Source of the DNA: Macrostomum lignano
Taxonomy: Eukaryota
Direction: 5' to 3'
Length of the DNA stretch: 64,000 bases
Assembly (NCBI GenBank): GCA_002269645.1
Contig: NIVC01003824.1
Span: forward strand, 1 to 64,000
Positions within the stretch are counted from its first letter, which is position 1. Each line of letters opens with the position of its first letter. The position numbers and the translations under genes are program-made. This document shows, piece by piece, positions 15,401 through 34,861 of this stretch. Under the pieces are notes generated by a model that worked only from the letters and a program-made list of their open reading frames with translations, was not told the origin of the DNA and ran no database searches.

Positions 15401-15722
15401 AAAACCAAGTCTATTTTCTATTATTTGCTCTTGTGAACTTGCAATGTGTAGAGTATGGCAATAGCTAGGAGATAAATTTTAATAGTGTAAAGAGTTGTCT
15501 AAACCGGATTATTTCATGGTGAAAAGACCCCTGTTTCCACTGCAAATGCATTGACAGCAACTCCTGACATGTGCCTAATGTGTGCAATATGCATGTTTAT
15601 TAGTCATGGAACTTGTCAGAAAAATTATGCTAGAAGTGAAAAATAGCACAATCCCTTGTGCCAAACACTTGGGGTCACTTCTTATTCTTTAGAGTGTTCT
15701 TTTACTGCATCTTCCAGCTCAG

Positions 15723-17912
15723 ATGCCTCTGTTAGGCATACCCAGTCTGTTGTCACCTGAACTGCTCAAGTGCCTAGCAGAGATGGGCCATGGCGACACA
15801 CTGGTACTGGCTGATGCCCATTTTCCTAGCCACAGCATTGCCCAGAAGGCCGGCTGTTCTGTCATTCGCTATGACGGTGTCGAAATGCCTCAACTATTGG
15901 AAGCCATCATGTCTGTGCTGCCTATTGATACCTATATTGAGAGTCCCATTGCACTCATGCAGGTTCGTTGCTTGCTTGGTGGTTATGTTGAGCCTGAGGG
16001 AGACTGGCAAAGTATGCGCGGGGAGACGGAGAGGGTGGGGAGATGGAGAGGGGTGAGAAGACGGAGAGGGGTGAGAAGACGGAGAGGGGTGAGGAGACGA
16101 AGAGGGATGGGAAGACGCAGAGGGGTGGGAAGATGGAGAGGGATAGAGGGATGGGAAGACAGAGAGGGGTGGGGAGATGGAAAGGGGGAGGGGGATGGAG
16201 AGGGGTGACAAGACGGAGAGGGATGGGGAGATGGAGAGGGGTGGGGAGATGGAGAGGGGTGGGGAGCTGGAGAGGGGTGGAGAGACGTTGAGGGGTGGGG
16301 AGTCGGAGAGGGTGGGAAGATGGAGAGGGATGGGAAGACGCAGAGGGGTGGGAAGATGGAGAGGGATGGAGAGACGGAGAGGGATGGGGAGACGGAGAGG
16401 GATGGGGAGATGGAGAGGGATGGGGAGACGGAGAGGGGTGGGGAGACGGAGAGGGATGGGGAGATGGAGAGGGGTGGGGAGATGGAGAGGGATGGGGAGA
16501 CGGAGAGGGGTGGGGAGATGGAAAGGGGTGAGAAGACGGAGAGGGGTGGGGAGACGGAGAGGGGTGGGGAGATGTAGAGGGATGGGGAGCTGGAGAGGGG
16601 TGGGGAGATGGAGAGGGATGGGGAGATGGAGAGGGATGGGGAGACGGAGAGGGGTGGGGAGATGGAAAGGGGTGAGAAGACGGAGAGGGATGGGGAGATG
16701 GAGAGGGATGGGGAGATGGAGAGGGATGGGGAGACGGAGAGGGGTGGGGAGATGGAAAGGGGTGAGAAGACGGAGAGGGGTGGGGAGACGGAGAGGGGTG
16801 GGGAGATGGAGAGGGATGGGGAGCTGGAGAGGGGTGGGGAGATGGAAAGGGGTGGGGAGCTGGAGAGGGATGGGAAGACGGATAGGGGTGGGGAGATGGA
16901 GAGGGGTGGGGAGATTGAGAGGGATGGGGAGCTGGAGAGGGGTGGGGAGATGGAAAGGGGTGAGAAGACGAAGAAGGATGGGGAGACGGAGAGGGGTGGG
17001 GAGATGGAAAGGGGTGAGAAGACGGAGAGGGATGGGGAGATGGAGAGGGATGGGGAGATGGAGAGGGATGGGGAGACGGAGAGGGGTGGGGAGATGGAAA
17101 GGGGTGAGAAGACGGAGAGGGAATCAGGGATGGGGAGACGGAGAGGGGTGGGGAGATGGAAAGGGGTGAGAAGACGGAGAGGGATGGGGAGATGGAGAGG
17201 GGTGGGGAGATGGAGAGGGATGGGGAGATGGAGAGGGATGGGGAGACGGAGAGGGGTGGGGAGATGGAAAGGGGTGAGAAGACGGAGAGGGATGGAGAGA
17301 CGGAGAGGGGTGGGGAGATGGAGAGGGATGGGGAGCTGGAGAGGGGTGGGGAGATGGAAAGGGGTGGGGAGCTGGAGAGGGATGGGAAGACGGATAGGGG
17401 TGGGGAGATGGAGAGGGATGGGAAGACGGAGAGGGGTGGGAAGATGGAGAGGGGTGGGGAGCTGGAGAGGGGTGGGAGATGGAAAGGGGTGGGGAGATGG
17501 AAAGGGGTGGAGAGATGAAAAGGGGTGGGGAGACAGGGCTGGGGAGATTGAGAGGGTGGGGAGACGGAGATGGGTGGAGAGACGTTGAGGGGTGGGGAGT
17601 CGGAGAGGGTGGGAACTACATTTAGAACGGCTGTGGTGAGACAGTATGTGGAGGCATTAAGCATAATATTTGAATTGGCAGGTTGAGCCATCAGACGCTG
17701 ACAAATTCAGTCCCAACCCGCCAATCTGGTCGGACTATGCAAAAGTGCACCCGCACTTTAGCTTATTGACCAGCAGCAGCGGCAAAAGTCGGGTGCAACT
17801 ATTGCCTCGCGAACAGTTTTACAGAGCAGCGGAGAGGGCCTACTGTGTTGTCCATACGGGGGAGCTGGCCCAGTATGCTAACATCATTATCACCAAAGGC
17901 GTTGCTATTTGA
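15723..17912 (+). CDS. FUOM: L-fucose mutarotase (RbsD/FucU family); exons 15723-15962, 17682-17912
   Basis: [26 protein letters not shown] and [29 protein letters not shown] signature segments; phase-0 junction CAG|gttcg ... ggcag|GTT. Confidence 0.93.
16020..17615. repeat. purine/G-rich 18-bp minisatellite (GGGGAGATGGAGAGGGGT-like) filling the FUOM intron
   Basis: period 18 visible; generates the PSPHPS, RRGVG and MERGG pseudo-ORFs. Confidence 0.95.
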
Positions 17913-18469
17913 AATTTAATCTAAGTCTGTTTAGCTATCGTAAAGTTCTACTACATTGCAATAATTGTTAAAATGCTCAGCTGGAGTTTATAAAGTTAAC
18001 ATGTGCACAAATCGAGAATAATAATATTTTCTACCGGTTCTAGTTTTTTCATTTTTTGTTGTACTTTTCTATCGACAAATTTACACTCTAAGCTAGATAA
18101 TTAGTGCTTTTACTGTACCTATTTATCACCAATATAGGCAATATTATTATATATTTTTATACAAATTAAACTGGTAACATTCTATATGATTAAGCATTGT
18201 ATATTAATGCAGTTTGACTTTGGTTTTAAATTTCTAAGAATTTCTGCATTTGAATAGGCGCCATTTGATTTCTAGTTTCCAACAAAGGTACCACAGGGAA
18301 GCTCAGCCATGCATTAATCATAGAATTGTTAAAATTGTAGTTTTACCACATTCAATAGAATGAATTGTGGCCAAGGTAATCTACCTGTAGGAAAGACCAT
18401 CTAGATCAGGGTTGGCAGACTTTTTACCTCAAGGGCCAGATCGAGAACCTGGCGCATGACTGTGGGCCA

Positions 18470-18648
18470 GAGGAAGGGAGAGAGGAGAGAGAATAGAGAA
18501 GAGAAATAGGAGAAAGGAGAGAGAAGGGAAAGGAGGAAGAAAATAGAGGAAAAGGAGGAGAAAGGAAAGAGGAGGGAAAAGAGAGGAGAAGGGAGATGAC
18601 AGGAGAGATAAGAAGAGAGGTGAGAGAAGAAAACTGAGAAGAGACACA
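18470..18648. repeat. GA-rich low-complexity tract
   Basis: almost pure A/G between FUOM and G6PC. Confidence 0.85.
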
Positions 18649-18803
18649 AACCTTGAGCAGGCAGGACTGGTTGTACACCCTGTGTGAGCGTGTGTCTGTT
18701 CAGGGGTCAGGGGAGTGCTCATTACTGTTTGCCGGCAGTACCAACTGCCCTAATTAGGCAAAAGATTCGCTAAAACCAAGCCGAATAATTAACCTTGCTG
18801 GAG

Positions 18804-19931
18804 TCTGTATTCGATTCGCTTCATCTGTCCGGCGCTCGAGCCGTCTCGGGCCTACAGACCGGCTTGATGCCGCTGGCCCAGCCTCTAATGCTGCTATCTG
18901 ATTTTGGGCATCCCGTCAGCGCATTTATAATTGCTTTCCCATTGTGCTACGCATTGAACTCGCACCTGGGCCTCACGGTATTGTGGTCGGCCGCTTTCTC
19001 CGAGTGGCTCAATGGCTTGTTAAAATGGGCTCTGCACGGAGAGCGGCCCTATTGGTGGGTTGGCGAGCGGCTGCGCCAAGTGAATCTCACTCTGGCCCAG
19101 TTTCCTCAGACCTGCGAGACTGGCCCGGGGTCTCCGTCCGGTCACTGCATGGTGGCAGCGGCCTCCTGGTACATCCCTGTGCTGTACGCCAGCCAGAGCT
19201 TGCCAACCAAGTCCAGGTTGGCTGTCAGATACGCCTACTTTGCTGGCATCACCGCCCTGGGCGTGTCGCGCTGTTTCTTAGCAACTCACTTTCCGCATCA
19301 GGCTGTTGGCGGAGTGATCACCGGCTGTCTGCTGTCAATTGTGGCCGTGAAAATGGGTAGCCAGATACTTCGCCCGTTTGCTCTGCTATTGTTGGCCTTC
19401 CTAATGTTCAGCAGCTCCCTGGGTGTTAGTCACTGTCTGCGTCAGCTGGGCCTCGATCCCGACTGGTCCATCCGGCTGGCCGAACGGCACTGCGCCAGCT
19501 CGGAGTGGGTTAGCATTGACACTACGCCGCTATTCAGCATCCACCGCGATATTGGTGCCATCCTTGGCGCCGCTTTCTCCAGCTTCCTGGCCAGCCTGCT
19601 GCCTGTTCCGGCTCCTAGTAGAACCGTGACTAAGTGCTTCGCAGGATTCTTGTCAATGTGCGCCTGCGTATTGTTGGAGAAGCGATTCCAGCCGAAGCCA
19701 GGCTTCTCCGATCTACAGACTTATCTGTTTGCCGCATTCAAGTACGCCCTGATGCCGCTGATTGTCACTATTGTGCTGCCGGTGCTGGCAGCCAAGCTGG
19801 ACTCGCGTCGGCTGGCTAGCGCAGGCCGCGGCAGTCACCACGCCGTCAGGCCACACGCTGCCAGACACGGTACCGCCACGGCTGCTGCCAAACCTGCCGG
19901 TAAACGGTCCGCTGCTAAGAAGGAGCGCTAG
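18804..19931 (+). CDS. G6PC: glucose-6-phosphatase catalytic subunit (PAP2 family), single coding exon, start codon not genomically evident
   Basis: KWALHGERPYWW, TCETGPGSPSGH and SRCFLATHFPHQ catalytic motifs; multiple TM segments; C-terminal KKER fits a KKxx ER-retrieval signal. Confidence 0.93.
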   Translation, partial: SVFDSLHLSGARAVSGLQTGLMPLAQPLMLLSDFGHPVSAFIIAFPLCYALNSHLGLTVLWSAAFSEWLNGLLKWALHGERPYWWVGERLRQVNLTLAQFPQTCETGPGSPSGHCMVAAASWYIPVLYASQSLPTKSRLAVRYAYFAGITALGVSRCFLATHFPHQAVGGVITGCLLSIVAVKMGSQILRPFALLLLAFLMFSSSLGVSHCLRQLGLDPDWSIRLAERHCASSEWVSIDTTPLFSIHRDIGAILGAAFSSFLASLLPVPAPSRTVTKCFAGFLSMCACVLLEKRFQPKPGFSDLQTYLFAAFKYALMPLIVTIVLPVLAAKLDSRRLASAGRGSHHAVRPHAARHGTATAAAKPAGKRSAAKKER

Positions 19932-20005
19932 ATCGATTGTTGAATGCCTGGCGATCATTTATTAGAGCTCCTGCTTGCCTTGGCCTATAGTGAGACTCTT
20001 AGTGC

Positions 20006-20587
20006 CACATCTAATCCTGACTGTCAGACACATCTAAGCCTGACTGTCGGACACATCTAAGCCTGACTGTCAGACACATCTAAGCCTGACTGTCAGACAC
20101 ATCTAAGCCTGACTGTCAGACACATCTAAGCCTGACTGTCAGACACATCTAAGGCTGACTGTCAGACACATCTAAGGCTGACTGTCAGACACATCTAAGC
20201 CTGACTGTCAGACACATCTAAGCCTGACTGTCAGACACATCTAAGCCTGACTGTCAGACACATCTAAGCCTGACTGTCAGACACATCTAAGCCTGACTGT
20301 CAGACACATCTAAGCCTGACTGTCAGACACATCTAAGCCTGACTGTCAGACACATCTAAGCCTGACTGTCAGACACATCTAAGCCTGACTGTCAGACACA
20401 TCTAAGCCTGACTGTCAGACACATCTAAGCCTGACTGTCAGACACATCTAAGCCTGACTGTCAGACACATCTAAGCCTGACTGTCAGACACATCTAAGCC
20501 TGACTGTCAGACACATCTAAGCCTGACTGTCAGACACATCTAAGCCTGACTGTCAGACACATCTAAGCCTGACTGTCAGATATCTAA
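20006..20587. repeat. 23-bp minisatellite (CTGACTGTCAGACACATCTAAGC)n, ~25 copies
   Basis: near-perfect tandem array starting ~75 bp after the G6PC stop. Confidence 0.97.
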
Positions 20588-21063
20588 TGTCAATTGCCAG
20601 GATGTCAGCCATTTCTATCTGTGACTGTCAGATATATTTGCGCCTCTGCTCTCTCTAAGTGGTTTTTTCATTGTTTCCTTCAAAAACTCAAAATCTCAAT
20701 TATCATATAGGTTTTAGTTTAAATTTAATTTTTTCCGAGTTGCAGTGTGAAATTTTGTTTTACTGATGTATGTCTAATTGTCTGAGCAAACGGACCGTTT
20801 TTATACTGCTTTTAATTAATTTGCTTGTTTTGATAAATCAGACAATTTGTTAGTACATATAGTACTTTCATATTTGTTAGCTAACTTCAAATTGATGTTA
20901 CATTTAGCTTTAAGAATAATGTATCCTTAATTGCCTTAATTTTCTTAGTATCTTTCGTTTAAATAGTTAATTTACGAGTATCCATAGATCTAAGAGTTGA
21001 TAGACATTGATAAATAGATATAACTTCTGTGCAAGATGTACTACTTGTGTACACTCAGCAACC

Positions 21064-21355
21064 CATGGATGAATAATATAACTGGATCGCCAGAAGCTTG
21101 GTTTTTTGGTCCTAGCCATTGACAAGCACCAGCATCACAAGAAGCTCAGAATGCCGTACTTTCACACAGACAAATAGCCGCTGCAGAAGCTGCAAACCTT
21201 TATTTATAAGTATTCTATTTTATGTCCAAGCACATGCTCGCAATATATGCAGGGTGAAAGTACGGCATTCTGAGCTTCTTGTGATGCTGGTGCTTGTCAA
21301 TGGCTGGGACCAGGAAACCAGGCTTCTGGCGATCCAGTTATATTATTCATCCATG
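21064..21355. mobile_element. MITE with ~100-bp TIRs and 8-bp TSD (hAT-like)
   Basis: CATGGATGAATAATATAACTGGATCGCCAGAAGC... mirrored at the right end; CAGCAACC at 21056-21063 and 21356-21363. Confidence 0.92.
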
Positions 21356-21824
21356 CAGCAACCAGGTTAAAAGAATTCTACCCGAAACCAGTTTTCTCGT
21401 AACTCTGCCACTGTCTCCTCAACAGCCTAAGCTGGGGCTTTGTGACGACACAGTTGCGATGACAAAGTGAATTTTGTCAACTGGGGATAATTTGACTACT
21501 GGTTTCGGGGTGAAAACTTGTGTGTTTTTAAATCTGTGTACTTTATCGAATTTTTTAAAGTTACCTTTGCTTTATTTGAAGTCCATGTTAGCTATTTGAT
21601 TGTATGTAGCAACCTTTCTTCTTGATTTCTCTCTCTCCACTGGACCATTTTTTAGCGTATGCATTTCTTGTTGCTTGCCCGCTAAAAGATTTGGCTGCTT
21701 CTTTGCGTGACTCGGGCTAGGATCCGCGATGCTTGCAGAAAATGAACTAAAAAAGCAGTCGTAGCTATTTGTGATGATTCTTTACTGGGAAACGGCACTA
21801 AGGAAGCTAGATGAAAACCGTACC

Positions 21825-22382
21825 TACTAGACCAAGTCGCCTCAGAGTTGTTTTATAGTCGCTGCAGGTAACGCAGGTTAAATAGGAAAGAAATGGACTC
21901 GAGACAACTGTAAAAAAGCCGAAATGTCACGGTACGAGTACAAGGCGCAAAAAATGTCATCAAAGAGTCGCCTAGAAGAGTCAATTTGAGGCCTTTTATT
22001 GTCTGCGACTCTGAAACGACTCTGGGGCCGTAGAGTCATATTGAGACATGCCATAGTCGCTGTAGAATCACTGAGTTGCGTCTAGAGGGCATTTGCGTCA
22101 CTTTATGCATTAGAACCGCATTTCGCATTTATAACAACTCTATTTAGACTACTTGAGTCAGTAGAAAGTTAAGCGCTAACACAGACGACTTTTGGACGAC
22201 TTTTTCACGACTCTCATGATTCTATAACTCACGTGATGGGCTCTTGTGACTCATCAGTCGCCTCTCCGTCGCATTGAAGTCGTTTGAGTCGTTAAAAAGT
22301 AAGAGTCGCCCCAGAGTCGTTTGAGTCACTATAGTGAGTTGTTTGCGATGAGATGACTCTTTGGCGATTCTTGTCACGGTAA
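21825..22382. repeat. degenerate element packed with GAGTC/GACTC(G) motifs, possible old MITE
   Basis: many dispersed AGTCG/CGACT/GAGTC motifs in both orientations; weak terminal similarity ACCGT...AAGTCGCC. Confidence 0.4.
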
Positions 22383-22630
22383 CGTTTTCAACAAAAAGCA
22401 CTCGATCGGGATGATTCTGCTCTGGGAATCAGCAGAAGAAAAATCCGAAAACCTCAGGGATTTTCGTATGATTCCAGCTACGTCAGAAGCAGAAGAAGAA
22501 GCACTTGATTTTTTAGCAAGATACCTGTCATATAACAAATAGCCTATTTGCTACCCTGTGTTAGTCTGTAAATGTTTTCCATCTAGAAGTTAAACGCTTT
22601 TTTGGACACCAATTATAGGATCGGAATAAA

Positions 22631-22987
22631 GGGGGGCCGTAGCCCAGCGGTAGCGCAGCTGCTCTGGTGTGCCGCGACCCAGGCTCGATTCCAAGTGCAG
22701 CCACATTAATTTGGGGCTGGATTGGAATCTTGGCTTGGCTCGCTTGTGCAATTAACGGCCTTGAGAGCCAACCCCCCAAGGCGCAGTGAAGTGTACATGC
22801 CTAACAATCGATAAAGTTAGGGCCGCTGTACACTCCTGTGTGAGTGTGTGCCTGCGTAACGTATCCGCGCGCTTGTATGCCTGCTCAGGGGAGTCGGCGG
22901 AATGGGCAGTAATGCCTCTCGCCGGTTGTGTGCCAATGACGCTTAAATTGCGCCAGGGTGCACACAACCCCCCTGCCTCTAAAAAAA
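22631..22987 (+). mobile_element. tRNA-derived SINE (family 2) with TSD
   Basis: A box TAGCCCAGCGG, B box GGCTCGATTCC, A7 tail; flanked by AGGATCGGA(A)TAA at 22617-22629 and 22987-22998. Confidence 0.8.
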
Positions 22988-24067
22988 GGATCGGATAACA
23001 TGTTTGAAATCCCATATTCCAGTTTTAATTGATGTTAGCTAATTTTAGCGCTGTACTGGCAATAGAGACTGAAGTTATAAATCAGAAATGTGAAATGTGA
23101 AATGCAATGACTGTTTTGCGCACACTTGGTTGCCAGCCAGAGCAATTTCACAATATGTGCCACTATAGCTATTTAGCAGGTATTAGCAAGGTACCGGTAT
23201 TTTTTGAGACTATAAAAACCCTATGGCTCTAGTCTGTATCATTGACTGCACTGCCAAATTATTGAAATACATAATGTAAACCCCGGAATTGCATCGCCCT
23301 CCTCACATGTTGCTAAGTGTATTGGTTTTAATTATTTTTTTTAATTTTAGCTGCTAAAATAACAGTGTGGATGTATGGATGGATCGGGATGACGGCCTAA
23401 GAACACAAAACGTTACACTAGCCAACTAAAATCTCGATCTTGTGAAGATAATCCACGTTGAATTAGGGAAGGGTTGTAGGCCTAGCTCTGTTGCTATAGT
23501 CAACAAGGATCCCTGTTGGGTCTTGTAGGACTTCAAGTTTTGATTTCAAAGTTATTAATAATCAGTTCTGTTCAGTTCATTGAATTAGACATTGATAGCT
23601 TTAAATCTGTATTAATTAAGCTTTGTTTAGGTCTTAGGCACTAATTTTTGTGTATCTATGCTTAATAAAGTTTACACTGAGTGCTGACATTTGACTCATT
23701 TATTTATCATTGATCCGTACCTAACTTGGTCAGCATGATTTTCTTCATTCTGTGTCTCTATTCACAGTGAGGCTTGCAATGATAGTATCTATATCCAACC
23801 TCCATTGGATAGACCAAATAGTGTGTATTCAGCTTTGCGCTGAAGCGTACAATGAGAAGCGTGTATAAATATTGATAGGCAAAGTGTCCCGTCCATTTGC
23901 TATACGTCAAGACGGACTGGAATTTAACTAAACAGCACCCGCAGTAAATTTTTTATTAACAAAACCTTTTTAAAAACATTTTATTACAGTTTAACTAACT
24001 TGTTGACCTGATAGTTGTCACGCCACAATTATAATCAATTAAAGAATAAACTATCAAGTCTTAATCA

Positions 24068-24484
24068 ATGGAGAAGTTCATCGGCACCTGGCGCCTGGAG
24101 TCGTCAGAGAATTTCGACGCCTACATGAAAGCAATCGGAGTTGGCTTTGTATTGCGCAAAGTTGGCAACACGGTCAAGCCGGATGTGCAGTTTTTGCGCA
24201 ACGAGGACGGCACCTGCACTATGAAGACCATCTCTACGTTTAAGAACTCGGAGATCACGTTTGAGTTGGACAAAGAGTTCGAAGAGACCACCATTGATGG
24301 TAGGAAGGTGCGGAGCACGATGACGATGACCGAGGGTGGCGAGCTGGTGCACAAGCAGGCCAGCGAGCCAGAGACCGTTATTGAACGCAAGCTGCAGGGC
24401 GATGGCGACAACGAGATGGTGTGCACAGTCAAGGCTGGTGACGTGGTCTGCACCCGTGCCTATAGGAAGCTTAATACGGCTTAA
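24068..24484 (+). CDS. FABP: fatty acid-binding protein (iLBP family), intronless
   Basis: GTWRLESSENFDAYMKAIGVG signature, FELDKEFEETTIDGRKV, ligand triad IER...RAY; AATAAA at ~24615. Confidence 0.95.
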   Translation: MEKFIGTWRLESSENFDAYMKAIGVGFVLRKVGNTVKPDVQFLRNEDGTCTMKTISTFKNSEITFELDKEFEETTIDGRKVRSTMTMTEGGELVHKQASEPETVIERKLQGDGDNEMVCTVKAGDVVCTRAYRKLNTA

Positions 24485-25876
24485 CTAAACTGCGTTGGTG
24501 GTAGTTTGAAAATTGAGAACTCTTCAAGAACGTCTTTTAGTAGAAGGCCGGCGCTGCACTCTCAACTTATTCGACTGTTTTTGCGATTATGAATATGCCC
24601 AGTTTCGTTCGTTCAATAAAATGTTAAATCCAATTTAAATTCGTGCCATAAGAACGCCTAGTTATAAGCATTTGTTAAATCTTGAACGTGCTCACTTATC
24701 TTGCTTGCCTTATTAGGCGTTCGAAAGCATTTTGTTAAACTAAGTCCCATTTTGGCGCGAATTTGAATCAGATTTAATTTAAGAAAAGGGACAGCATGAC
24801 TTCCGTTAGACAGTTAAAATGACAGTGCAGTGTATGCAACTACTACTAGTAGTCTTGCGAACACGCAGTATAATGTTATTAAAACTTAATTATTCTGATT
24901 GTTATTATTTACTCTGCTAATCCCAATGGCGTAAAAATGAATAAAAAGCGGAAATTATTGTCACAGCTTATATTAACTATTGGTCACGTTTATATAGTTT
25001 TTGTTTGTCTACTGTTTGTGTCCATTAATTTCTATAATATTTAATATCTTTAACAAGCTTGATACCTATTTATTCGCTTAAGTTGTGTTTCTTTTGTCAT
25101 CCTTAATTATTATTGCCGGTCGAACCATTACTACATGCTAATTGCTTTATGTTTTGCTTGTTCGCTTTTTCTGTCATTATACTCTTTCTAATCCAATGCT
25201 ACTTCAAGTAGGTCTTAAAAGTGTGGTAATCTATATGAGTTCAAATCGTTGTTTCTAGTCCATAACGCTATGAACGTTCAGTTGATGTGCAATATTGATG
25301 TCCCAAGTGCAATAAAATAGACACACGTTTTATCAGTCCATTTTAAAACAAGTTTGAATATTTTACTAGGTTACTGCTTTGGTTCAACACTTATTAAAAT
25401 GTTTCTTAGGCTTCCATGCTAGAATCTATATAGTAAATATGCGTTTTCGCAATCATTTTCAAGCGTGTTTACTTCATATAAAGTAGGTCAAAGTATTTCA
25501 ATAATAGTTGTCTAAGATCTAAGATCTAAGATCCCGCTTATCAGCAGATTTTTCGATAATTAGTTGATTTTCAGACCAACAAAGTTTTCAGTTTTCCAGT
25601 TTAAAAGGACTCAAATTTCCGATTGTTATAAAATCTCCTTATTTTTATGGACTAGTCGTTTTGTTATTAGTTACCTAAACAGCTTGCTTATTCCAGCTTA
25701 TATCTATAGTATCTATATATGTCTAAATATATATATAACGAAACGTTTAAAACAAAAGAAATGACCGCCTTTAACATCTTCAAGGTCGCAAAGCTAATAA
25801 CGGTCGGTTTATAAAAAGAAGTCTGCGAACAGTTACGCGCACAATAAATTTTTTTGACTTTCGATTTTAAAGTTAC

Positions 25877-27154
25877 CAGTGTTGGGCACTTCCGTTACCG
25901 AGTAACTTGCAAATGGTAACGCAAGTTACTTTTCCGTAAAGCGTTCCTTACGCAAGTTACTTTCCTATTTTGGTAACGGAGTAACGGTAAGTTACTCAAA
26001 TTTCGGAAGTCCGTTACAGTTACTTTGCAACAATCGCAATATTTAAATTTAAAACTGATATGCTTAGCTATTACTCCAGTTGTCACATTTTTAGCATTTT
26101 TCATTCCTAAATTCAAAACTAAGTGAATAATATCATACGGTATTACGCTGTAATTAATAAAGAAATACTTGAAACATGTTTTTACTTTGTTATTTTCGGT
26201 AAAATATTTTTGCTTTTCGTTTTAAGTTAATAAAAATATTTTGTTTAGTTCTTAGAAACAAACAACCAAAGAAAGAAATTCATCTGTAGTCTCCACAAAT
26301 CCACTCAGTGATCGACGTAGCCAGGAATTTTAATTTGGGGGGGGGGGCGGGTTGGCCTGGCTGGCCATGCCTCATGCCATTGCCAATTTTAGCGCCGCAG
26401 GCACTCATTTTAGCGCCGCAAGCACTCATTTAAGCGCCGCAAGCACTCATTTAAGCGCCGCAGGCACTCATTTAAGCGCCGCAGGCACTCAATCGCCTCA
26501 TGGTTTTTGGTACCCGCCACGCCCAACCCCACCCCCCCCCCCAGGTGGGGTGTCTTGCAGGTGGGGTGAAGTTGCCGCCCCAACGATTGTTAAGGCGGCC
26601 TCCCTAGCTACACCACTAAAGTCCACTGGCACTGCACTGCACTGCACAATTTAATATTAATGATAATAATTGAAAATAAATAAAAAGACTAGTAAAGCAG
26701 ACTATAGAGTGGAGTAAAGCCAGGTACTTATTACGAGCGATGTATTATCAAGGACAACTGAAGTTACGTTAAGTTGTCCTTGTGTATTATAACTTATAAT
26801 GTTATTAAAAATTAAATTGCGTTTTGCCTTTAACGTTTCTGACCTTCAGCTTCTTTTCTTTTTACGGAAAGGGCCTAAAGTGATTAAAATTTAATACAGT
26901 TACTGAAATTAATGTTGTTGTATTCTTCCTCCTGGCTTTCGCGATCATTTGTGCTGTTCCAGCGCATTTGCAATGTTAAAAAAGCAGAAAATTTTGTTAA
27001 TAACATAGGTAACGGAAGTAAGTAACGGAAGTAACTTAAAAGTTACCGGGTTTTTGTATAAAGTTACTAGGCTAACGTAAGTTACTTTTTATAAAGTGGT
27101 AACTTAAGTTACAGTAACGCAAGTTACTTTTTTTGAGTAACTTGCCCAACACTG
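25877..27154. mobile_element. non-autonomous hAT element, TIR CAGTGTTGGGCA, 8-bp TSD AAAGTTAC
   Basis: TSD at 25869-25876 and 27155-27162; dense subterminal GTAAC/GTTAC motifs at both ends. Confidence 0.9.
26306..26619. mobile_element. nested hAT-like MITE (CAGTG..CGTAGCCAGG / CTAGCTACACCACT) with internal 21-bp array
   Basis: imperfect TIRs, TSD AATCCACT/AGTCCACT, five AGCGCCGCAGGCACTCATTT units. Confidence 0.7.
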
Positions 27155-27214
27155 AAAGTTACTGTAGATTTAATGTTAGCTCCGTCAGCTCCATTTTATA
27201 CAATTTCTAGAATA

Positions 27215-27511
27215 CGAGGGGTGTCTCAGAAGTAGTGTCACTTTTGCTTGCTTCCACAAGTATTAATGTGTGTTTAAAAATCATATGCCTTAAAAGTTAG
27301 CGGCTTATTTTAGCTTTCATGCCACGAAAGTCCGATCTTTATAAGTGCTTCCTGCTGTAAGCAGCATGCATTTGTTCGCATACCCTTAGCCATAGAAATA
27401 CACACCGCATAGTGCTCGCTCAGAAGACAGCCACAAGTACAGCTGATCAAGCACAGAGTTAAACACACATTGAAGCAAGCAAACGTGACACTAATTCTGG
27501 GACACCCCTCG
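27215..27511. mobile_element. Tc1/mariner-type MITE, 297 bp
   Basis: TA|CGAGGGGTGTCTCAGAAGTAGTGTCAC ... GTGACACTAATTCTGGGACACCCCTCG|TA. Confidence 0.92.
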
Positions 27512-27939
27512 TAGTTTTTGAACCCGTTGTATTTACATGTACATTTGACATTGTCATGTACATGCCCTTTGATGAGCATATGATACCTTTTAGATTTAGC
27601 GCATATCATGCATATGGGGATAAATTTATATATAGTAACCAGTAATTTACTTTCAACTCGCCTTTACATTGCAAAAAAGTATTCAAAACAGTCGACTGCG
27701 TAAAAGCTGTTATTTTTAGGTTAGCTTGCAAAATCTATTCAGTTTGGTTTGACTTCCCGTATCTTGTTAGTACAAACTAACGACTGTCGTTATGTTTAAA
27801 GTTTACATCGCCAACTTTTTGTGGGCATTTTGAAAGGCCAACTTTCCATGATACACATTAACTTTGCAAATTGCGTCACTCGTTGCACAAAACAACGAGT
27901 TATTAGCTCGTTATTAGCTTTAATAACGAAAAATACCTA

Positions 27940-28365
27940 GTGAAAAAGCATCTCAAGATACACAGAGAAAGAGAACTTAGCCAAAAGCTAGAGAATCAGC
28001 AACATATTAAACTCTACAAAAACGCCTATCTCTACAAAAAAATCTGCAGGCCCGACCTTTCAGATTACTTTCCATGTACATTTAGAAACAAAAAATTCTT
28101 AACAACCCTCCTAAAACTGAAATGCGAGATTACACCCAACTTTTTTTCTCAAGAACCATGTAAAATGTGTGGAGCGCGAAATGGTTCTGACATTCTACAC
28201 TACTTGACCGAATGTCCACAAACTGAAGAGATCAGGAAAAAATACTTCTGTCAATTCCTCTTAAATAGCAATCAAATACACAAGATAGGATATGCTACAA
28301 ATGAAAAAAGAGTCAGAAAAGAACTCACTGGTGTAGCTAAAATATATGAAGTCATGAATAGCTAA
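27940..28365 (+). mobile_element. 5'-truncated LINE ORF2 C-terminus (CCHC region)
   Basis: LLKLKC...CKMCG...DILHYLTECPQTEEIRKKY, typical post-RT zinc-knuckle region of non-LTR elements. Confidence 0.7.
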
Positions 28366-30754
28366 AACAGTTAAACAAACTGAATCAGATACATTAGCAG
28401 TGTAACAAATCCGCTTTTCAGTTGTTTATTCATTTACTGTCTTTTTTAATTCCCTATTTAAATCGTCGTTATTCGTTAAACGTAAAGTTCTTTCGAAGTA
28501 TTGTTTATGTTCGTTTTTTCACGCTTTGAAATATCACGCGCTTTCAAAAATACTACATCTTTTTTTACAAACTCGCTTACCAAAGTAATCTCGCAATTAA
28601 AGCTATACCTCGTAATTTGTACTCATTTTTGTATTAATATTTATACTCGTTGTTAGTTATTAGTCGTCACTTTTCGTCCAAAAATACCGTAAAAATTCTG
28701 GCGCGCTTTCAAATACTTTATCTTTTACCATAACTCTAACTCTTACTACTACTAACTCGCGGCAAATCGTCTTTATAAACTTCTATTTCGAAAACTTTTC
28801 CAAATACATAGCTCTATAATATATTGGCCAAACAGGCTAATTGCCTGAGCCAAATTCTCTTACTACTACTAAAAACGAAACTGAAAAACCGAAACTTAAA
28901 TACTGATACTGATACTGTGTTATAAAATAAACTGTCTTGAAATGTCTTGGTTTAATTTTTTTGCATCTTTGCAAGCAAATATAACTAGACATTTTATCAC
29001 GTCTCATCCTTTTAATAAATATAGGTTGCTGTTGCAGTTTTAGTATTCATTCTCATTTAGCAGAATTTAATTTTTTTTTCAAATCATTTAACAGTTTCCT
29101 GCGTTACCTTAAATTACATTAATCAAGAACTCAATATCACGGTAAGCTTTGATTTATGTATTTTTTGTTTCTATAATTTATCTATTAGGCCCTAATACCT
29201 ATCTATGATATATCTACAATACAATAGACTAGAGATCATATCTGACAATGTGGCCATTGTGGGTTCTGGTTTGTAATTGAAAGTTGGCATATAGTTGGCA
29301 TAATGTTCTACTGACATATCATATTGGCTGTAAGTAATAAGAAACTTGGTTTAAACTTGCTTAAAATTTTTATTCATTTTTTTTTATTTTGGCATATATT
29401 CAATGCCATGCCACATAATGTCAATGAATAAAAATTGAGATTTCAAAATGTGCTTTTTGGCTTTGGTGGGTATACATAGGCACAAACAACCCTAAAAGCA
29501 ACACTAAGACTCCAAAAAGTCTTCATAGAACTTTTTGGAGTTGGTTGTAGAGACTATGATATGTATTTCCCATTCAGATATATTAATCATTTCTTTTATT
29601 AAATATATATTTATATATAAATAGATTTATATAAAATAAAATATTTATATAAAATAAATATTATTAATAATATTTTAATATTTGTTGTCTTAGAGTTATA
29701 ATTTATTTTAAAAGTTAAAGTCTGCTATCTATTGCACCTTGGCAAAAGCTATTGTGGTGCTATAATTTTGTGATAAGCATCTATAGCATCTAAGCATAAT
29801 GCATATAATTTATAAATTATAAATAAACCTATGCCTATAGTGCTTATCTATAGTATGCTAGGGCCTAATACTAGAATAAGTTTATTTGTATTTGCACCAT
29901 GAATTGGAACTATTTTTGTTAGCCCTACACTTTACTATGTTAGATATTTTTCTTTTTCTACTATTGCACCAGAATGTACTGATATAGCACACATTCAAGT
30001 TCAACCCTTTTTTGCTCTGAAATCTTCCTAACTATTGACCTGTGTCACTTATTTGCAGGATCTAAACTTGTACTCTAATAGGGCTTCATAATGCATAGGT
30101 ATACTATTAATATTAGTATTAATAAAACCAGAACCTACCATATTTAGTTTTCATTAAAGTCTAAGCCTTTATAGTAGGAACCAGATACTTTAGTATTAGT
30201 CAGTTTGGTAATAGTCATTTTAAAAAACATTTATTTTGGTGACAAGTTAGGGCCTACTTTGGTACTAAATATGTATGGAAGATTGAGTGTCTATTATTAA
30301 TAAGTTTTTATTTGTGTTTTTAAAGGTAATTAAAAATGATGCTTTATCATTGTTTTATTATTATTTCTTTAAATACCTTCTAGTTCTTGCTTTTATAGTT
30401 ATTGTTAATAATATATATTAATATCCACTTGAAAAAGCCCTTGGCACACTAGTATGGAATTTCTATATAAAATCAAAAATCAAAAGCAAAAGCTTTATTT
30501 TCATAGTTTTAGCTAGGCTTATGGGACATTTTTAAAGCTAAAATGCCATATGAAGAAAAAAGTTTGCATAGAAATATAATCAACTATATTCCATATTGCA
30601 AAGCATATAAATAAATGTTTTAAATTTTTTAACTTACACAAATTGCTAATTTTTGAATAAACTATGACTAACTTTCTATAGTAGTCTAAATTTTATCCTA
30701 TTATTTGCTTTATTGTTTTAAATATAAATATACCCTATTAATCCCATTTTAGGC

Positions 30755-33700
30755 ATGACATTTAGCTTCACAATTCTGGATGAGAACAAACTACAATTCA
30801 ATATATCAGTGCCAAACCATCTGTCAATTCAGTTCTATTCAGCATCTTGCAACAGCTCAATTGCACTTATTCCTCACAGTTTTGGCCTGTTGCAATTGGC
30901 TGATTTATTGAGTTCAGTAATAGGTTTTACATTGCCACCTAATAATCCAAGTGTGATACTAATTGACAAGGAAGGTCACTTAATGACAGTTAAAACTGAT
31001 GAAGATTTAAGGCAGGTCTACTATTGGCATAGGTAAGTGTGAATTTTTTTCACTAATCTCACTATAAAATAAGTCAAGTGCACCTGATTTATGATTTTTG
31101 ACTAGCTGATAGGTGGAACTATGATTTATGACTGACTGATGCACAGGTGCAGTTTTGATTTATGACTGACTGATGAGCAGGTACAGTTATGATTTATGAC
31201 TGACTGATAGGTGCAGTTATGATTTATGACTAACTGATAGACATGTGAAATTATGATTTATGACTGACTGATGCACATGTGCAGTTATGATTTTTGACTG
31301 ACTGATAGACAGGTTAATTTATGATTTATACCAAGCTTACAGAATATAGCTTTAATAACTAAACTATGTAATGACTTCTCCCACACTACGAAGTTTCGTT
31401 AAGCTGCACCAAACGCAGCAGCATCAGCAGCCGCAGACTCGGCAACGCTGGGGCCGTCTCCCGCATCACGTGACTGTCTGGCTGTGCGGCGGGGTCGCCC
31501 TGCTAGCGCCCAGAGCTCTGCAATTCGATGAGCTGACCTCCGCTTGTGCTGACATTCTGACTAGGCTTGGCCAGACCTGCGCTGTTGCCGGTGCCAACCT
31601 AGCACCCGAACTGCTCACCACAATGTCCAATGGGCAGTGTCAGTTGTGCTCCGAGAATTCTGTGTAAGCACACTGATAATTACCTGATTAGTATACAGAA
31701 TGGTGCGATGTGGTTTCGATTGAAACACCTCAAGCATTTGCATGCCAAATACGAGGCTTGTCTGGCAAATTGTCCCCAGAGTCGTTTTAGAGTAGCAGAC
31801 AATATCGCCCCAATAATCGACTCAAATTGACTCTTCTAGGCGACACTCATGGCCTGAGACTACCCTACGCTATGTAATGAGGCCTGAAAAATTTTCTCTT
31901 TTACCGACACCGGCATACTTTTGATGAATCCAGCGATTGCAAGTTGCAGGCTTGACTTAAGTGAATGACGAGGTAACAGAGGTATAGTGACAGAGCTGGA
32001 GACCAAAAATCGTGTCAATAATCACTTTGGATCGCCCCAATAATTGCCTTGGATCTCCACAATAATCGCCCTAAAATCGCCCCGATAATCGCCCTACAAA
32101 TTGCTTCGCCCAAATTGAAAAATCGCCCAAAAGTCGCCAATAATCAACCTAAAAATCGCTCTTATAATCGCCCCAATAATCACCCCAATAATCGCCCCAA
32201 TAATCGCCAAAATAATGACCACAATAATCGCCCCAATAATCGCCACATTAATCGCCCCAATAACCCCCCAATAATCGCCACAATAATCGCCACAATAATT
32301 GCCAAAATAATCGCCACAATAATCGCCGCAATAATCGCCCCAATAATCGCCGCAATAATCGCCGCAATAGTCGGCCCCAATAATCGCCCAAATAATGGCC
32401 TCAATAATCGCCCCAATAATCGCCTAAATAATCGCCACAATAGTCGCCCCAATAATCGCCCAAATAATCACCTTAATAATCGCCTCAATAATCGCCCAAA
32501 TAATCGTCCCAATAATCGCCCAAAAACCGATCCAATAATCGCCCCAATAATTGCCCAAATAATCGCCCCATTTATCGCCCAAATAATCGCCCCAATAATC
32601 GCCTAAATAATCACCACAATGGTCGCCCCAATAATCGCCCAAATAATCGCCTTAATAATCGCCCCAATAATCGCCCAAATAATCGTCCCAATAATCGCCC
32701 AAAAACCGATCCAATAATCGCCCTAATAATTGCCCAAATAATCGCCCCATTTATCGCCCAAATAATCGCCCAAATAATCGCCCCAATAATCGCGTCAATA
32801 GTCGCCCCAATAATCACCACAATAATCGCCCCAATAATCGCCCCAATAATCGCCCAAATAATCGCTTCAATAATCGCCTCAATAATCGCCCCAATAATCG
32901 CCCCAATAATCGCCACAATAATCGCCCCAATAATCCATCCGCATGCCACCCTGCAGCAGTTCGGGCATGCAAACAACCATTCGAAGCGAGTCCGCCTACG
33001 CCAGCATTCGCAGCTCGTCGTCTCCCTGCTGCTGCCAGTTTCAATTCTACAGTCAAGCAGGAGGCAGCGCTGGCTCCGTGCAGATGCCAAGTCAGCCAGC
33101 CTCAGCGGCAGCAGCCTGTTCTGCAGCTGCGGCTGAACCCGGCCAGTCTGAGGAAGCCCTGGCCGCTAGACAATGGTGCTTGGATGACTTTGACTTCGGT
33201 CAGGAAAGAAATTGCCTTGGCTTTGGTCAGTTTGGCACCGTGTACATGGCTATGTGCAAGTGAGCGGTGGGAGATGGGAAAGTGGGATGTGGGAGATGGG
33301 AGAGTGGGATGTGGGAGATGGGAGAGTGGAATGTGGGAGATGGGAGAGTGGGATGTGGGAGATGGGAAAGTGAGATGTGGGAGATGGGAGAGTGGGATGT
33401 GGGAGATGGGAGAGTGGGATGTGGGAGATGGGAAAGTGAGATGTGGGAGATGGGAGAGTGGGATGTGGGAGATGGGAGAGTGGGAGAGTGGGATATTGGA
33501 GATGGGAGAGTGGGAGATGGGAGATGGGAGAGTGGTAGATGGGAGATGAGAGATGGGAGAGTGGAGAGTGGGAGATGCAAGAGTAGGAGAGTGAAAGAAT
33601 GGGAGAGGGAGAGTTGGGAGAGTTGGAGACTGGGAGATGCGAGAGTGAGAGATAGGAGATGGCAGAGTGGAAGATAAGAGACTGGGAGATGGGAGACTGG

Positions 33701-34861
33701 GAGCTGAGAGATAGAAGATTGAGAGACAGGAAATGGGAGACTGGGAGAAGGAAGAGTGGGGATTGGAGAGTGGGAGATGGGTGAGTGAAAGAATGGGAGA
33801 AGGAGAGTTGGAGACTGAGAGATGGGAGAGTGAGAAATGGGAGAAGGAGAGTTGGAGACTGAGAGATGGGAGAGTGAGAAATGGGAGGATAGGAGAGTGG
33901 AAGATGGGAGAGTGAGAGATGGGAGAGTGGAAGATGGGAGAGTGAGAGATGGGAGAGTGGAAGATGGGAGAGTGAGAGATGGGAGAGTGGAAGATGGGAG
34001 AGTGAGAGATGGGAGAGTGGAAGATGGGAGAGTTGGAGACTGGGAGATGCGAGAGTGAGAGATGGCAGAGTGGAAGATAAGAGACTGGGAGATGGGAAAT
34101 GGGAAGTGAGAGATTGGAGATGGGAAAGTGGGAGAGTGGAAGATGGGAGACTGGGAGAGTGGAAGATGGGAGACTAGGAAATAGGAAAGTGGGAGAGTGG
34201 AAGATGGGAGAGTGGGAGATGGGAAAGTGGAAGAGTGGAAGATGGGAGAGTGGGAGATGGGAGACTGGGAGATGGGAGAGTGGGAGATGGGAGACTGGAA
34301 GATGGCAGAGTATAAGATGGGAGACTGGGAGATGGGAGAGTGGGAGACTGGAAGATGGGAGACTGGGAGAGTGAGAGATGGGCAAGAGGGAGATGGGGGA
34401 GCAAAAATGCAGACAGTATCAGCAGTCCTTAAGCCCCCACCCCCGGCCACTCAGGGTGACCAACAAGCCGGTCGCTCTGAAGTCCATCGACCTGTGCGCC
34501 CTCGGCAACATGGGCGGCAATGCTGGCCGCTTAGACGAGGCGGAGATCGAACGGCTGATGCTGGAGCTGAAGCTGCTGGCCGACTGCAGGCACGACAATA
34601 TCATCAGCTACCTGTGCTCGTTCTTTGAGCAGTCGCGGGGCCGGCTGTTCATCTGCACGGAGGTGATGGACGCCGGTTCGCTGGATAAGCTGGGGATCGC
34701 CGACGATCCAGTTCTCGGTTAGTCAGAGCTCTGTTGTGGTGCCTGTGTCTGCCTATCTGTGCCTGTGTCTGCCTATCTGTGCCTGTCTGTGCCTGTCCGT
34801 GTCTGTCTGTGCCTGTCTGTAGGTGTCTGTCGGTGTTTGTCTGCCTGTCTGTGCCTGTCTA

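What the first reader, a model, noticed from the sequence alone, without database searches (positions are those of the whole stretch)
18786..18869. G6Pase lacks a genomic start codon for its conserved N-terminus; the AUG may come from a spliced leader
Seen: an in-frame TAA (18786-18788) precedes the ORF and the first ATG is at 18867. Yet residues before it (DSLHLSGARAVSGLQ) align with the conserved G6PC N-terminus (NVLHDFGIQSTHYLQ). An AG at 18802-18803 sits exactly in phase 0 before TCT GTA TTC GAT. Known: flatworm spliced leaders end in AUG, which can act as the initiator Met. Inference: trans-splicing gives M-S-V-F-D-S-L-H..., so translation of this gluconeogenic enzyme would depend on SL addition.
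Basis: partly seen in the sequence, partly recalled or inferred. Interest (0 to 1): 0.72.

Follow-up and report, generated by a model that had tools for sequence, protein, structure and literature searches.

The report
Flatworm G6Pase lacking genomic start codon
In the flatworm Macrostomum lignano, an otherwise intact glucose-6-phosphatase gene has no genomic ATG ahead of its conserved first helix, so its start codon most likely comes from the trans-spliced leader RNA, a mechanism already documented in schistosomes.

Summary
The window is Macrostomum lignano contig NIVC01003824.1. It carries an intronless glucose-6-phosphatase (G6Pase) gene at 18804-19931.

- **No genomic start.** The 21 codons at 18804-18866 encode the conserved N-terminal luminal helix. 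This includes the invariant Gln that corresponds to human Q20. In-frame stops lie upstream at 18786 and 18771. The first ATG is at 18867.
- **Lost ancestral ATG.** The codon where 102 of 117 homologues have Met is TTC here.
- **Three copies agree.** All three genomic copies share this layout. The coding sequence is under purifying selection (19 synonymous against 6 non-synonymous changes).
- **Spliced leader fits.** The published M. lignano spliced leader (SL) ends in ATG. Of the AGs in the window copy, only the one at 18802-03 lets that ATG open a full-length frame (MSVFDSLH...).
- **Annotation agrees.** GenBank marks all three copies as 5'-partial. One begins exactly after this AG.

Initiation from the SL AUG is therefore the best explanation (about 0.7). 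I could reach no RNA-level evidence, so trans-splicing at this site is inferred, not shown.

The rivals are initiation at ATG 18867, a near-cognate TTG, and an unseen cis-spliced 5' exon.

The mechanism is already known from Cheng et al. 2006 (over 40 Schistosoma mansoni cDNAs). This is a new member of a known kind and of modest interest.

The parts
18804..19931 (+). Intronless G6Pase coding body. It runs from the first base after the AG to the stop TAG (19929-31): 375 codons, with no ATG in the first 21.
   Evidence: ORF and translation. PAP2 Pfam hit at E = 6e-17. Human G6PC1 in the PDB at E = 7e-45. AF2 model with pLDDT 88.7; Foldseek top hits are human G6PC1 9j7v/9j7u with TM 0.78-0.87. 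Against the paralogue there are 19 synonymous and 6 non-synonymous changes.
18804..18866 (+). Twenty-one codons (SVFDSLHLSGARAVSGLQTGL) encoding the N-terminal luminal amphipathic helix LH1. They lie upstream of the first genomic ATG.
   Evidence: Position-matrix score 24.6 bits, the best of 58,326 six-frame 18-mers, with 0 of 100,000 shuffles reaching it. Column composition. Modelled as a confident helix, pLDDT 88-97.
18810..18812 (+). TTC (Phe) in the alignment column where homologues carry their initiator Met. This is the lost ancestral start codon.
   Evidence: 102 of 117 homologues have M in this column. Many library hits align their residue 2 with the residue after this F.
18855..18857 (+). 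CAG encoding the invariant Gln, equivalent to human G6PC1 Q20.
   Evidence: Q in 114 of 117 homologues and invariant in alignment A2. In human G6PC1, Q20 bridges LH1, TM4 and LH2, and Q20R strongly impairs activity and expression (PMC11789071).
18802..18803 (+). AG, the proposed SL trans-splice acceptor (context CTGGAG|TCT). It is in phase 0 with the ORF.
   Evidence: Sequence. Conserved in all three copies. In the window copy it is the only AG giving a full-length SL-AUG ORF, MSVFDSLH..., 376 aa. The annotated CDS of paralogue PAA93593.1 starts exactly here.
18786..18788 (+). In-frame TAA closing the frame upstream. It is present in the window and in L003, and is TAC in L002.
18771..18773 (+). 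Second in-frame TAA, conserved in all three copies. There is no ATG between it and 18804.
   Evidence: Sequence and alignment A1.
18692..18803 (+). Conserved ATG-free block upstream of the acceptor. It is a candidate outron or promoter-proximal region.
   Evidence: 4 substitutions and no indels in 110 nt against L002. The distal intergenic DNA has 75 substitutions in 724 nt plus 123 indel columns.
18795..18797 (+). In-frame TTG with A at -3, a near-cognate start usable only on an unspliced mRNA. This belongs to a rival explanation.
   Evidence: Sequence. Conserved in all three copies, whereas the adjacent CTG (18798-800) is CAG in L002.
18852..18857 (+). CTACAG, an alternative acceptor that matches the published trans-acceptor motif [T/C]TNCAG. 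It is also in phase 0 and would give MTGLMPL... (358 aa) without LH1.
   Evidence: Motif from PMC8629364.
18867..18869 (+). First genomic in-frame ATG, in a weak context (T at -3, C at +4). Starting here deletes LH1.
18596..18621 (+).
   Evidence: Present in the window and L003. The ATG is AGG in L002, which has no equivalent.
19023..19301 (+). PAP2/G6Pase catalytic signature: K-x6-RP (19023-19049), PSGH (19134-19145) and SR-x5-H-x3-Q (19266-19301).
   Evidence: Invariant columns K79, R86, P87, P116-H119, R161, H167 and Q171 in alignment A2. Motif definition from PMC11789071.
15723..17912 (+). Upstream same-strand gene (RbsD_FucU family). Its stop lies 891 nt before the acceptor, so it is a possible operon partner.
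   Evidence: Called genes. Start context. AATAAA at 18165.

Best explanation
The locus is a functional, intronless glucose-6-phosphatase gene of Macrostomum lignano that has lost its ancestral genomic start codon (Met to Phe, TTC 18810-12).

Proposed mechanism: the pre-mRNA is trans-spliced at the AG at 18802-03. In the divergent copy L002, the CAG three bases upstream could also be used. Splicing joins the 35-nt spliced leader, which ends ...UUGCAUG, directly to UCU GUA UUC GAU. The SL's terminal AUG then serves as the initiator and gives M-S-V-F-D-S-L-H-L-S-G.... That product contains the luminal helix LH1 and its invariant Gln.

What is shown:
- the gene's identity and intactness
- the absence of any genomic in-frame ATG ahead of a significantly conserved N-terminus, in all three copies
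- the in-phase AG
- an SL that ends in ATG (from the literature)

What is inferred:
- that this AG is used as a trans-splice acceptor
- that ribosomes start at the SL AUG
For: 1. **Identity.** PAP2 domain. Human G6PC1 at E = 7e-45 across the whole length. Catalytic motif invariant. AF2 model with pLDDT 88.7 matches G6PC1 structures at TM 0.78-0.87.
2. **Conserved N-terminus without an ATG.** The position matrix gives 24.6 bits and ranks the segment first of 58,326 six-frame 18-mers. F sits where 102 of 117 homologues have M. In-frame stops lie at 18786 and 18771, and there is no ATG in the conserved 110-nt upstream block.
3. **The helix matters.** Human Q20, equivalent to the Gln at 18855-57, bridges LH1, TM4 and LH2, and Q20R impairs activity (PMC11789071).
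4. **The gene is under selection.** There are 19 synonymous and 6 non-synonymous differences against paralogue L002. The single change in 18804-18866 is synonymous.
5. **Organism and SL.** M. lignano. The SL ends in ATG, and 30-39% of genes are trans-spliced (PMC8629364; PMC5730564).
6. **Acceptor.** Only AG 18802-03, plus the extra CAG in L002, gives a full-length SL-AUG ORF.
7. **Annotation.** The published pipeline trims the SL, cuts transcripts at SL-read peaks and runs TransDecoder. All three copies come out 5'-partial, with starts 0, 12 and 15 nt after the AG, and none extends upstream.
8. **Precedent.** The SL AUG is required by more than 40 S. mansoni cDNAs (Cheng et al. 2006, via PMC9851317). 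The Macrostomum SL ATG has been flagged as a likely start codon (PMC10468722).
Against: - No SL-containing read, EST or cDNA for this gene could be reached.
- In the window copy the acceptor is GAG, not the preferred CAG, and it lacks a clear polypyrimidine tract.
- The annotation's 5' ends are ragged. The neighbouring RbsD_FucU gene is 5'-partial in two copies although it has a genomic ATG. The exact AG start of PAA93593.1 could therefore be coincidence.
- The phase match has a one-in-three chance. Cheng et al. reported 28% of trans-spliced S. mansoni transcripts in frame, which is about chance level.
- A consensus acceptor at 18852-57 is also in phase and could compete.
- No close orthologue exists in the libraries to test conservation of the arrangement.
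Confidence: 0.7

Rival explanations
1. Translation starts at the first genomic AUG (18867). The mRNA would either be unspliced, with a transcription start near 18800-18820, or trans-spliced at the consensus CTACAG acceptor (18852-57). The protein would then lack LH1, and the upstream homology would be an untranslated relic.
For: ATG 18867 is the first AUG on any transcript starting within 18692-18866, because the conserved upstream block contains no ATG. Annotated transcript 5' ends fall at 18802-18819, which could equally be a cluster of transcription start sites. CTACAG fits the published acceptor motif better than CTGGAG. A few database homologues are annotated without LH1, for example P0117.
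Against: The 18 pre-ATG residues keep the family's most conserved N-terminal positions (D, L, H, G, L, Q) with an open frame. Loss of the equivalent of Q20 is damaging in human G6PC1, yet the rest of the CDS is under purifying selection. TTC differs from ATG at two positions, so the loss is not very recent. ATG 18867 has a poor context. All annotated transcripts include sequence upstream of 18857.
Confidence: 0.12
2. Non-AUG initiation on a conventional, unspliced mRNA. A near-cognate codon upstream of the helix, TTG at 18795-97, starts translation and gives (M)LESVFDSLH....
For: TTG 18795 is in frame, lies downstream of the 18786 stop, has A at -3, and is conserved in all three copies. Near-cognate initiation is documented in animals (PMC9851317).
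Against: UUG is generally a weak initiator. The adjacent CTG is not conserved, being CAG in L002. None of the three RNA-based gene models extends upstream to include 18795. The organism has a ready source of AUG in its SL.
Confidence: 0.07
3. A cis-spliced upstream exon supplies the ATG and is joined to the same AG.
For: Phase-compatible ATG-to-GT candidates exist. ATG 18596 through 18619 is followed by a good donor, GTGAGA, in the window and L003. ATGACT|GTGGGC near 18456 is shared by all three copies.
Against: The GTGAGA candidate lies in a GA-rich simple repeat, and its ATG is AGG in L002. The only shared candidate has a poor donor, ACT|GTGGGC. The RNA-seq-guided gene models of all three copies are single-exon and 5'-partial, with no upstream exon. 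Homologues need at most a few residues ahead of this point.
Confidence: 0.05

Closest known systems
SL 3'-terminal AUG used as initiator methionine in flatworm mRNAs (Cheng, Cohen, Ndegwa & Davis 2006, J Biol Chem 281:733; Schistosoma mansoni)
   Same: The organism is a flatworm whose SL ends in AUG. The acceptor puts that AUG in frame with an ORF that has no genomic AUG for its conserved N-terminus. The predicted result is that a full-length protein requires trans-splicing.
   Different: The species is a free-living macrostomorph, not a schistosome. Trans-splicing and SL-AUG use are inferred from sequence and annotation and are not shown on cDNA or in translation assays. Here the position of the lost ancestral ATG can be pinpointed (Met to Phe).
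Human G6PC1 / vertebrate G6PC1-3 glucose-6-phosphatase catalytic subunits (PDB 9j7v, 9j7u, 9jtl)
   Same: The nine-TM PAP2 fold, the KX6RP-PSGH-SRX5HX3Q signature, the N-terminal luminal helix LH1 with the invariant Gln, and a C-terminal di-lysine (KKER against KKSL-type).
   Different: Sequence identity is only about 30-37%. The gene is intronless. It has a roughly 35-residue basic, low-confidence C-terminal tail. The initiator Met is not encoded in the genome.
SL-resolved operons of M. lignano (Ustyantsev & Berezikov 2021)
   Same: The upstream gene is on the same strand, 891 nt (CDS to acceptor) away. That is under the 1-kb repeat-adjusted threshold the authors used. The gene order is kept in all three copies.
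   Different: The distance is far above the roughly 100-bp mode for operons. A conserved 110-nt block just upstream could be an independent promoter. Co-transcription was not tested.
slORFs: ORFs created by start codons inside spliced leaders (slORFfinder, PMC9851317)
   Same: A start codon carried by the SL defines the reading frame of the recipient mRNA.
   Different: That work mostly concerns new or alternative ORFs and near-cognate codons in nematodes. Here the SL AUG would restore the canonical ORF of a conserved enzyme.

Membership tests
Glucose-6-phosphatase catalytic subunit (G6PC family, PAP2 superfamily) | PAP2 phosphatase signature KX6RP - PSGH - SRX5HX3(D/Q) | tested here: met
   KWALHGERP, PSGH and SRCFLATHFPHQ are present. 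These columns are invariant across 20 aligned homologues. Pfam PF01569 at E = 6e-17.
Glucose-6-phosphatase catalytic subunit (G6PC family, PAP2 superfamily) | Full-length similarity and the nine-TM fold of G6PC1 | tested here: met
   phmmer against the PDB gives G6PC1 at E = 7e-45 over residues 8-336. The AF2 model has pLDDT 88.7 and pTM 0.85. Foldseek top five hits are all human G6PC1, TM 0.76-0.87.
Glucose-6-phosphatase catalytic subunit (G6PC family, PAP2 superfamily) | N-terminal luminal amphipathic helix LH1 with the conserved Gln (human Q20) | tested here: met
   It is encoded at 18813-18866 and predicted helical with high confidence. Whether it is translated is the open question.
Glucose-6-phosphatase catalytic subunit (G6PC family, PAP2 superfamily) | Hydrolysis of glucose-6-phosphate in the ER lumen | not testable with these tools
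   This needs an enzyme assay. The family also includes G6PC2/3-like members with low or different activity.
Flatworm mRNAs that use the SL 3'-terminal AUG as initiator | The organism's spliced leader ends in AUG | tested here: met
   The published M. lignano SL is CGGTCTCTTACTGCGAAGACTCAATTTATTGCATG (PMC8629364). The organism was identified through the contig record. No SL RNA gene lies in this window.
Flatworm mRNAs that use the SL 3'-terminal AUG as initiator | The SL AUG is in frame with the ORF at the acceptor, with no intervening stop | tested here: met
   AG 18802-03 gives ATG+TCT..., a 376-aa ORF. In L002 the extra CAG acceptor is also in phase.
Flatworm mRNAs that use the SL 3'-terminal AUG as initiator | No genomic in-frame AUG is available for the conserved N-terminus | tested here: met
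   In-frame stops at 18786 and 18771. No ATG in 18692-18866. This holds in all three copies.
Flatworm mRNAs that use the SL 3'-terminal AUG as initiator | The mRNA is actually trans-spliced at that acceptor (SL-bearing reads or cDNA) | tested here: inconclusive
   There is only indirect support. All three copies are annotated 5'-partial by a pipeline that trims the SL and cuts at SL peaks, and one starts exactly after the AG. However, 5' ends are ragged elsewhere, and no reads or cDNAs were reachable.
Flatworm mRNAs that use the SL 3'-terminal AUG as initiator | The protein begins with the SL-encoded Met | not testable with these tools
   This needs N-terminal proteomics, ribosome profiling or reporter assays.
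Downstream gene of an SL-resolved operon (M. lignano) | Same-strand upstream gene within 1 kb (repeat-adjusted), and a trans-spliced downstream gene | tested here: inconclusive
   The RbsD_FucU stop at 17912 is 891 nt from the acceptor, and part of that distance is a GA-rich simple repeat. The threshold comes from PMC8629364. Trans-splicing and co-transcription are not shown.

The most novel reading that the evidence does not exclude
After losing its own ATG, this G6Pase may have become obligatorily dependent on trans-splicing, with the choice between two in-phase acceptors acting as a switch. The weak GAG acceptor at 18803 would give an LH1-containing, active enzyme. The consensus CTACAG acceptor at 18857 would give an LH1-less, probably inactive product. 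SL site choice or efficiency would then set glucose output post-transcriptionally.
Probability: 0.08. Interest if true: 0.55.

Novelty: new member of a known kind. Interest (0 to 1): 0.3.

Why it matters
If confirmed, this is a clean, gene-level example outside the parasitic flatworms of a conserved metabolic enzyme whose start codon has moved from the genome into the spliced leader. The lost ancestral ATG is identifiable as a Met-to-Phe change.

It has a practical side. SL-trimmed transcript annotation in Macrostomum leaves such genes as '5'-partial hypothetical proteins'. Re-attaching the SL ATG before ORF calling would complete them.

It also gives a simple test case for SL-AUG initiation in a species where transgenesis works. 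It does not reveal a new mechanism.

Tried and rejected
- **Protein-library search for SL-joined transcripts.** I searched for transcript-derived fragments carrying the translated SL prefix plus the N-terminus. The search returned only 5 candidates and no hit, not even the window's own protein. I treat this as uninformative rather than negative.
- **Cluster members.** The three members of the protein's 90% cluster are all GenBank genome annotations. There are no transcriptome-derived members.
- **Closer orthologues.** I looked for other Macrostomum or flatworm sequences to test conservation of the missing ATG. Nothing is closer than about 38-50% identity in either library. Annotated parasitic-flatworm orthologues carry an M at the ancestral position.
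- **P0172.** This protein starts MSVTRELY..., which superficially resembles the predicted MSVFDSLH. It is only 36% identical and its contig is not on record, so I dismissed the match as coincidence.
- **Gene identifier in the literature.** Mlig010597 was not found in any paper text or held supplement.
- **Metagenome scan.** An exact scan of metagenome contigs for the exon start found 0 hits.
- **Retrogene idea.** I tested whether an SL relic survives upstream of this intronless gene. The local alignment of the SL to the 120 nt upstream scores no better than shuffles.
- **Other features.** There is no SL RNA gene in the window and no Rfam family hit.
The candidate at 18596-18619 is not conserved in L002.
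- **Paralogue divergence as a coding test.** For 18804-18866 there is one synonymous change in 63 nt, which is too little to separate coding constraint from the equally conserved non-coding block upstream.
Full report
**Where the window comes from.** The ORF's product is on record on contig NIVC01003824.1 of assembly GCA_002269645.1. Locus L001 from that record is identical to window 8816-29931, so window coordinates equal record coordinates. A member of the same 90% protein cluster is PAA93593.1, 'hypothetical protein BOX15_Mlig010597g1, partial [Macrostomum lignano]'.

**The observation.** The sequence shows the following:
- TAA at 18786-88, in frame with the ORF
- codons TTA ACC TTG CTG GAG at 18789-18803
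- AG at 18802-03
- TCT GTA TTC GAT TCG CTT CAT... from 18804
- the first in-frame ATG at 18867
- the stop TAG at 19929-31

A further in-frame TAA lies at 18771-73. The ORF has no introns.

**What the gene is.** Several lines agree that it is a G6Pase.
- Pfam finds a PAP2 domain at E = 6e-17.
- phmmer against the PDB finds human G6PC1 at E = 7e-45 over nearly the whole length.
- The signature KX6RP / PSGH / SRX5HX3Q sits in invariant columns of a 20-sequence alignment.
- An AlphaFold2 model built on that alignment has mean pLDDT 88.7 and pTM 0.85. Its best PDB matches are the five human G6PC1 entries, TM 0.76-0.87.
- The C-terminus ends KKER, a di-lysine motif.

**Is the pre-ATG homology real?**
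- I aligned the N-termini of 117 homologues. The column of F (TTC, 18810-12) holds M in 102 of them.
- The following M. lignano residues match the dominant residues at the best-conserved columns: D (65/117), L (56), H (75), G (108), L (92) and Q (114).
- A log-odds matrix of these columns scores the 18 residues at 18813-18866 at 24.6 bits. That is the best of 58,326 stop-free 18-mers in six frames of the window, with the next at 13.0. None of 100,000 shuffles reaches it.
- Exhaustive HMMER hits typically align their residue 2 to the residue after F.
- The invariant Gln at 18855-57 corresponds to human Q20. In the cryo-EM study of human G6PC1, Q20 lies in the N-terminal luminal amphipathic helix LH1 and bridges LH1, TM4 and LH2. 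The disease mutation Q20R strongly reduces activity and expression (PMC11789071).
- The AF2 model places this stretch in a confident helix.

So the gene encodes a conserved, probably needed N-terminal element for which the genome offers no AUG.

**Three genomic copies.** M. lignano carries two further copies, L002 on NIVC01000024.1 and L003 on NIVC01000260.1. Both have the same gene order: RbsD_FucU, G6Pase, lipocalin, kinase.

L003 has no substitutions against the window from 17913 to the stop codon. L002 is diverged:

| Region (window vs L002) | Substitutions | Notes |
|---|---|---|
| Distal intergenic DNA | 75 in 724 nt | plus 123 indel columns |
| Block just upstream of the AG | 4 in 110 nt | no indels |
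| 18804-18866 | 1 in 63 nt | synonymous |
| 18867-19928 | 24 in 1062 nt | mostly third positions |

Across 18804-19931 this totals 19 synonymous and 6 non-synonymous changes, so the gene is under purifying selection.

The layout is shared by all three copies:
- no ATG between the conserved TAA at 18771 and 18867
- AG|TCT conserved
- F at the ancestral Met column

L002 differs in three informative ways:
- The 18786 TAA is TAC.
- CTG at 18798-800 is CAG. This creates TTGCAG|GAG|TCT, a tandem acceptor whose upstream member fits the published motif and is also in phase.

**The spliced leader and the mechanism.**
- The published M. lignano SL is the 35-mer CGGTCTCTTACTGCGAAGACTCAATTTATTGCATG. It is found on 30-39% of genes. 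The top motif at trans-acceptors is [T/C]TNCAG, present at 9,551 of 21,754 sites (PMC8629364; PMC5730564).
- All reported flatworm SLs end in AUG (PMC12582326).
- Cheng et al. 2006 showed that the SL AUG can serve as initiator. It is in frame in 28% of trans-spliced S. mansoni transcripts and is required by more than 40 cDNAs (as summarised in PMC9851317).
- For Macrostomum, the SL ATG has been explicitly flagged as a likely translation start (PMC10468722).
- I joined ATG to the sequence after every AG from 18687 to 18857. In the window copy only AG 18802-03 gives a full-length product, MSVFDSLH..., 376 aa.
- Upstream AGs give ORFs of 3-48 codons. The CTACAG acceptor at 18852-57 gives an in-phase product of 358 aa that lacks LH1.
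- An N-terminal extension of three residues before the ancestral Met column is within the range seen among homologues.

**What the existing annotation adds.** The published pipeline trimmed SL sequences, mapped SL-bearing reads, cut transcriptional units at SL-read peaks (TBONE), and then called ORFs with TransDecoder. A gene that depends on the SL AUG would come out of that pipeline as 5'-partial.

That is what is seen. The three CDSs start at SVFD (exactly after the AG, in L002), at SLH (+12, in the window) and at LHL (+15, in L003). None reaches upstream and none has an upstream exon.

I weight this only moderately. The neighbouring RbsD_FucU gene is also 5'-partial in L002 and L003, starting 9 nt after a genomic ATG. 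In the window copy its CDS starts at an ATG that directly follows CAG. Model 5' ends are therefore sometimes ragged. The lipocalin and kinase genes have ordinary ATG starts in all copies.

**Rivals.**
1. *Initiation at ATG 18867.* This is possible on an unspliced mRNA or after splicing at CTACAG. It discards LH1, which conflicts with the conservation of those codons and with selection on the rest of the gene.
2. *Near-cognate TTG at 18795.* It has A at -3 and is conserved. It requires an unspliced 5' end that no gene model shows.
3. *A cis-spliced ATG exon.* The good-donor candidate lies in a GA-rich simple repeat and is absent from L002. The only shared candidate, ATGACT|GTGGGC, has a poor donor.
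4. *A retrogene carrying an SL relic.* Rejected, because there is no SL similarity upstream.

**What could not be done.** No RNA-level data were reachable.
- The protein libraries hold only the three genome-derived entries.
- One targeted search behaved oddly and is uninformative.
- The gene identifier is absent from the searchable papers and supplements.
- A metagenome scan found nothing.
- No close orthologue is available.

**Verdict.** Its key step, SL addition at 18804 followed by use of the SL AUG, remains an inference. The mechanism is well established in flatworms, so this is a new member of a known kind. It is a tidy example, useful for annotation and as a test case, but not surprising to a specialist.

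Noticed in passing
window 16020-17613: An 18-bp tandem repeat (GGGGAGATGGAGAGGGGT, about 88 copies, 82% matches). It is strongly purine-skewed and lies inside the span of the upstream RbsD_FucU gene, presumably in an intron. That gene's span differs between the copies: 2190 nt here, 1679 in L002 and 1013 in L003. This suggests the array length varies.
   Followed up: partly
window 20006-20580: A 23-bp tandem repeat (CACATCTAAGCCTGACTGTCAGA, 25 copies, 99% identical). It starts only 75 nt after the G6Pase stop codon, so it is probably in or next to the 3' UTR. The 3' flank aligns poorly between the three copies.
   Followed up: no
window 15712-15731; L002 7360-7380; L003 8067-8087: The upstream RbsD_FucU gene's ATG (15723) directly follows ...CTCAG. 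If that AG is a trans-splice acceptor, the SL AUG would sit in frame immediately before the genomic AUG. In L002 the CAG is CAA. In L002 and L003 the GenBank CDS is 5'-partial and starts 9 nt after the ATG.
   Followed up: partly
window 15723-34484 versus L002, L003 and L005: The gene order RbsD_FucU, G6Pase, lipocalin, protein kinase is kept in three separate contigs. One copy (L003/L005) has no substitutions against the window from 17913 to the G6Pase stop codon; the other (L002) differs at about 2% of coding positions. This fits the reported hidden polyploidy and large duplications of M. lignano.
   Followed up: partly
window 18469-18620: A GA-rich simple-repeat tract between the two genes. 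It shows indels and substitutions between copies.
   Followed up: yes
tool behaviour: A 110-aa plain-letter query made of the translated SL prefix plus the G6Pase N-terminus returned only 5 word-sharing candidates and no hit. The window's own protein P0001 shares about 95 identical residues with that query. The result should not be read as absence of matches.
   Followed up: no
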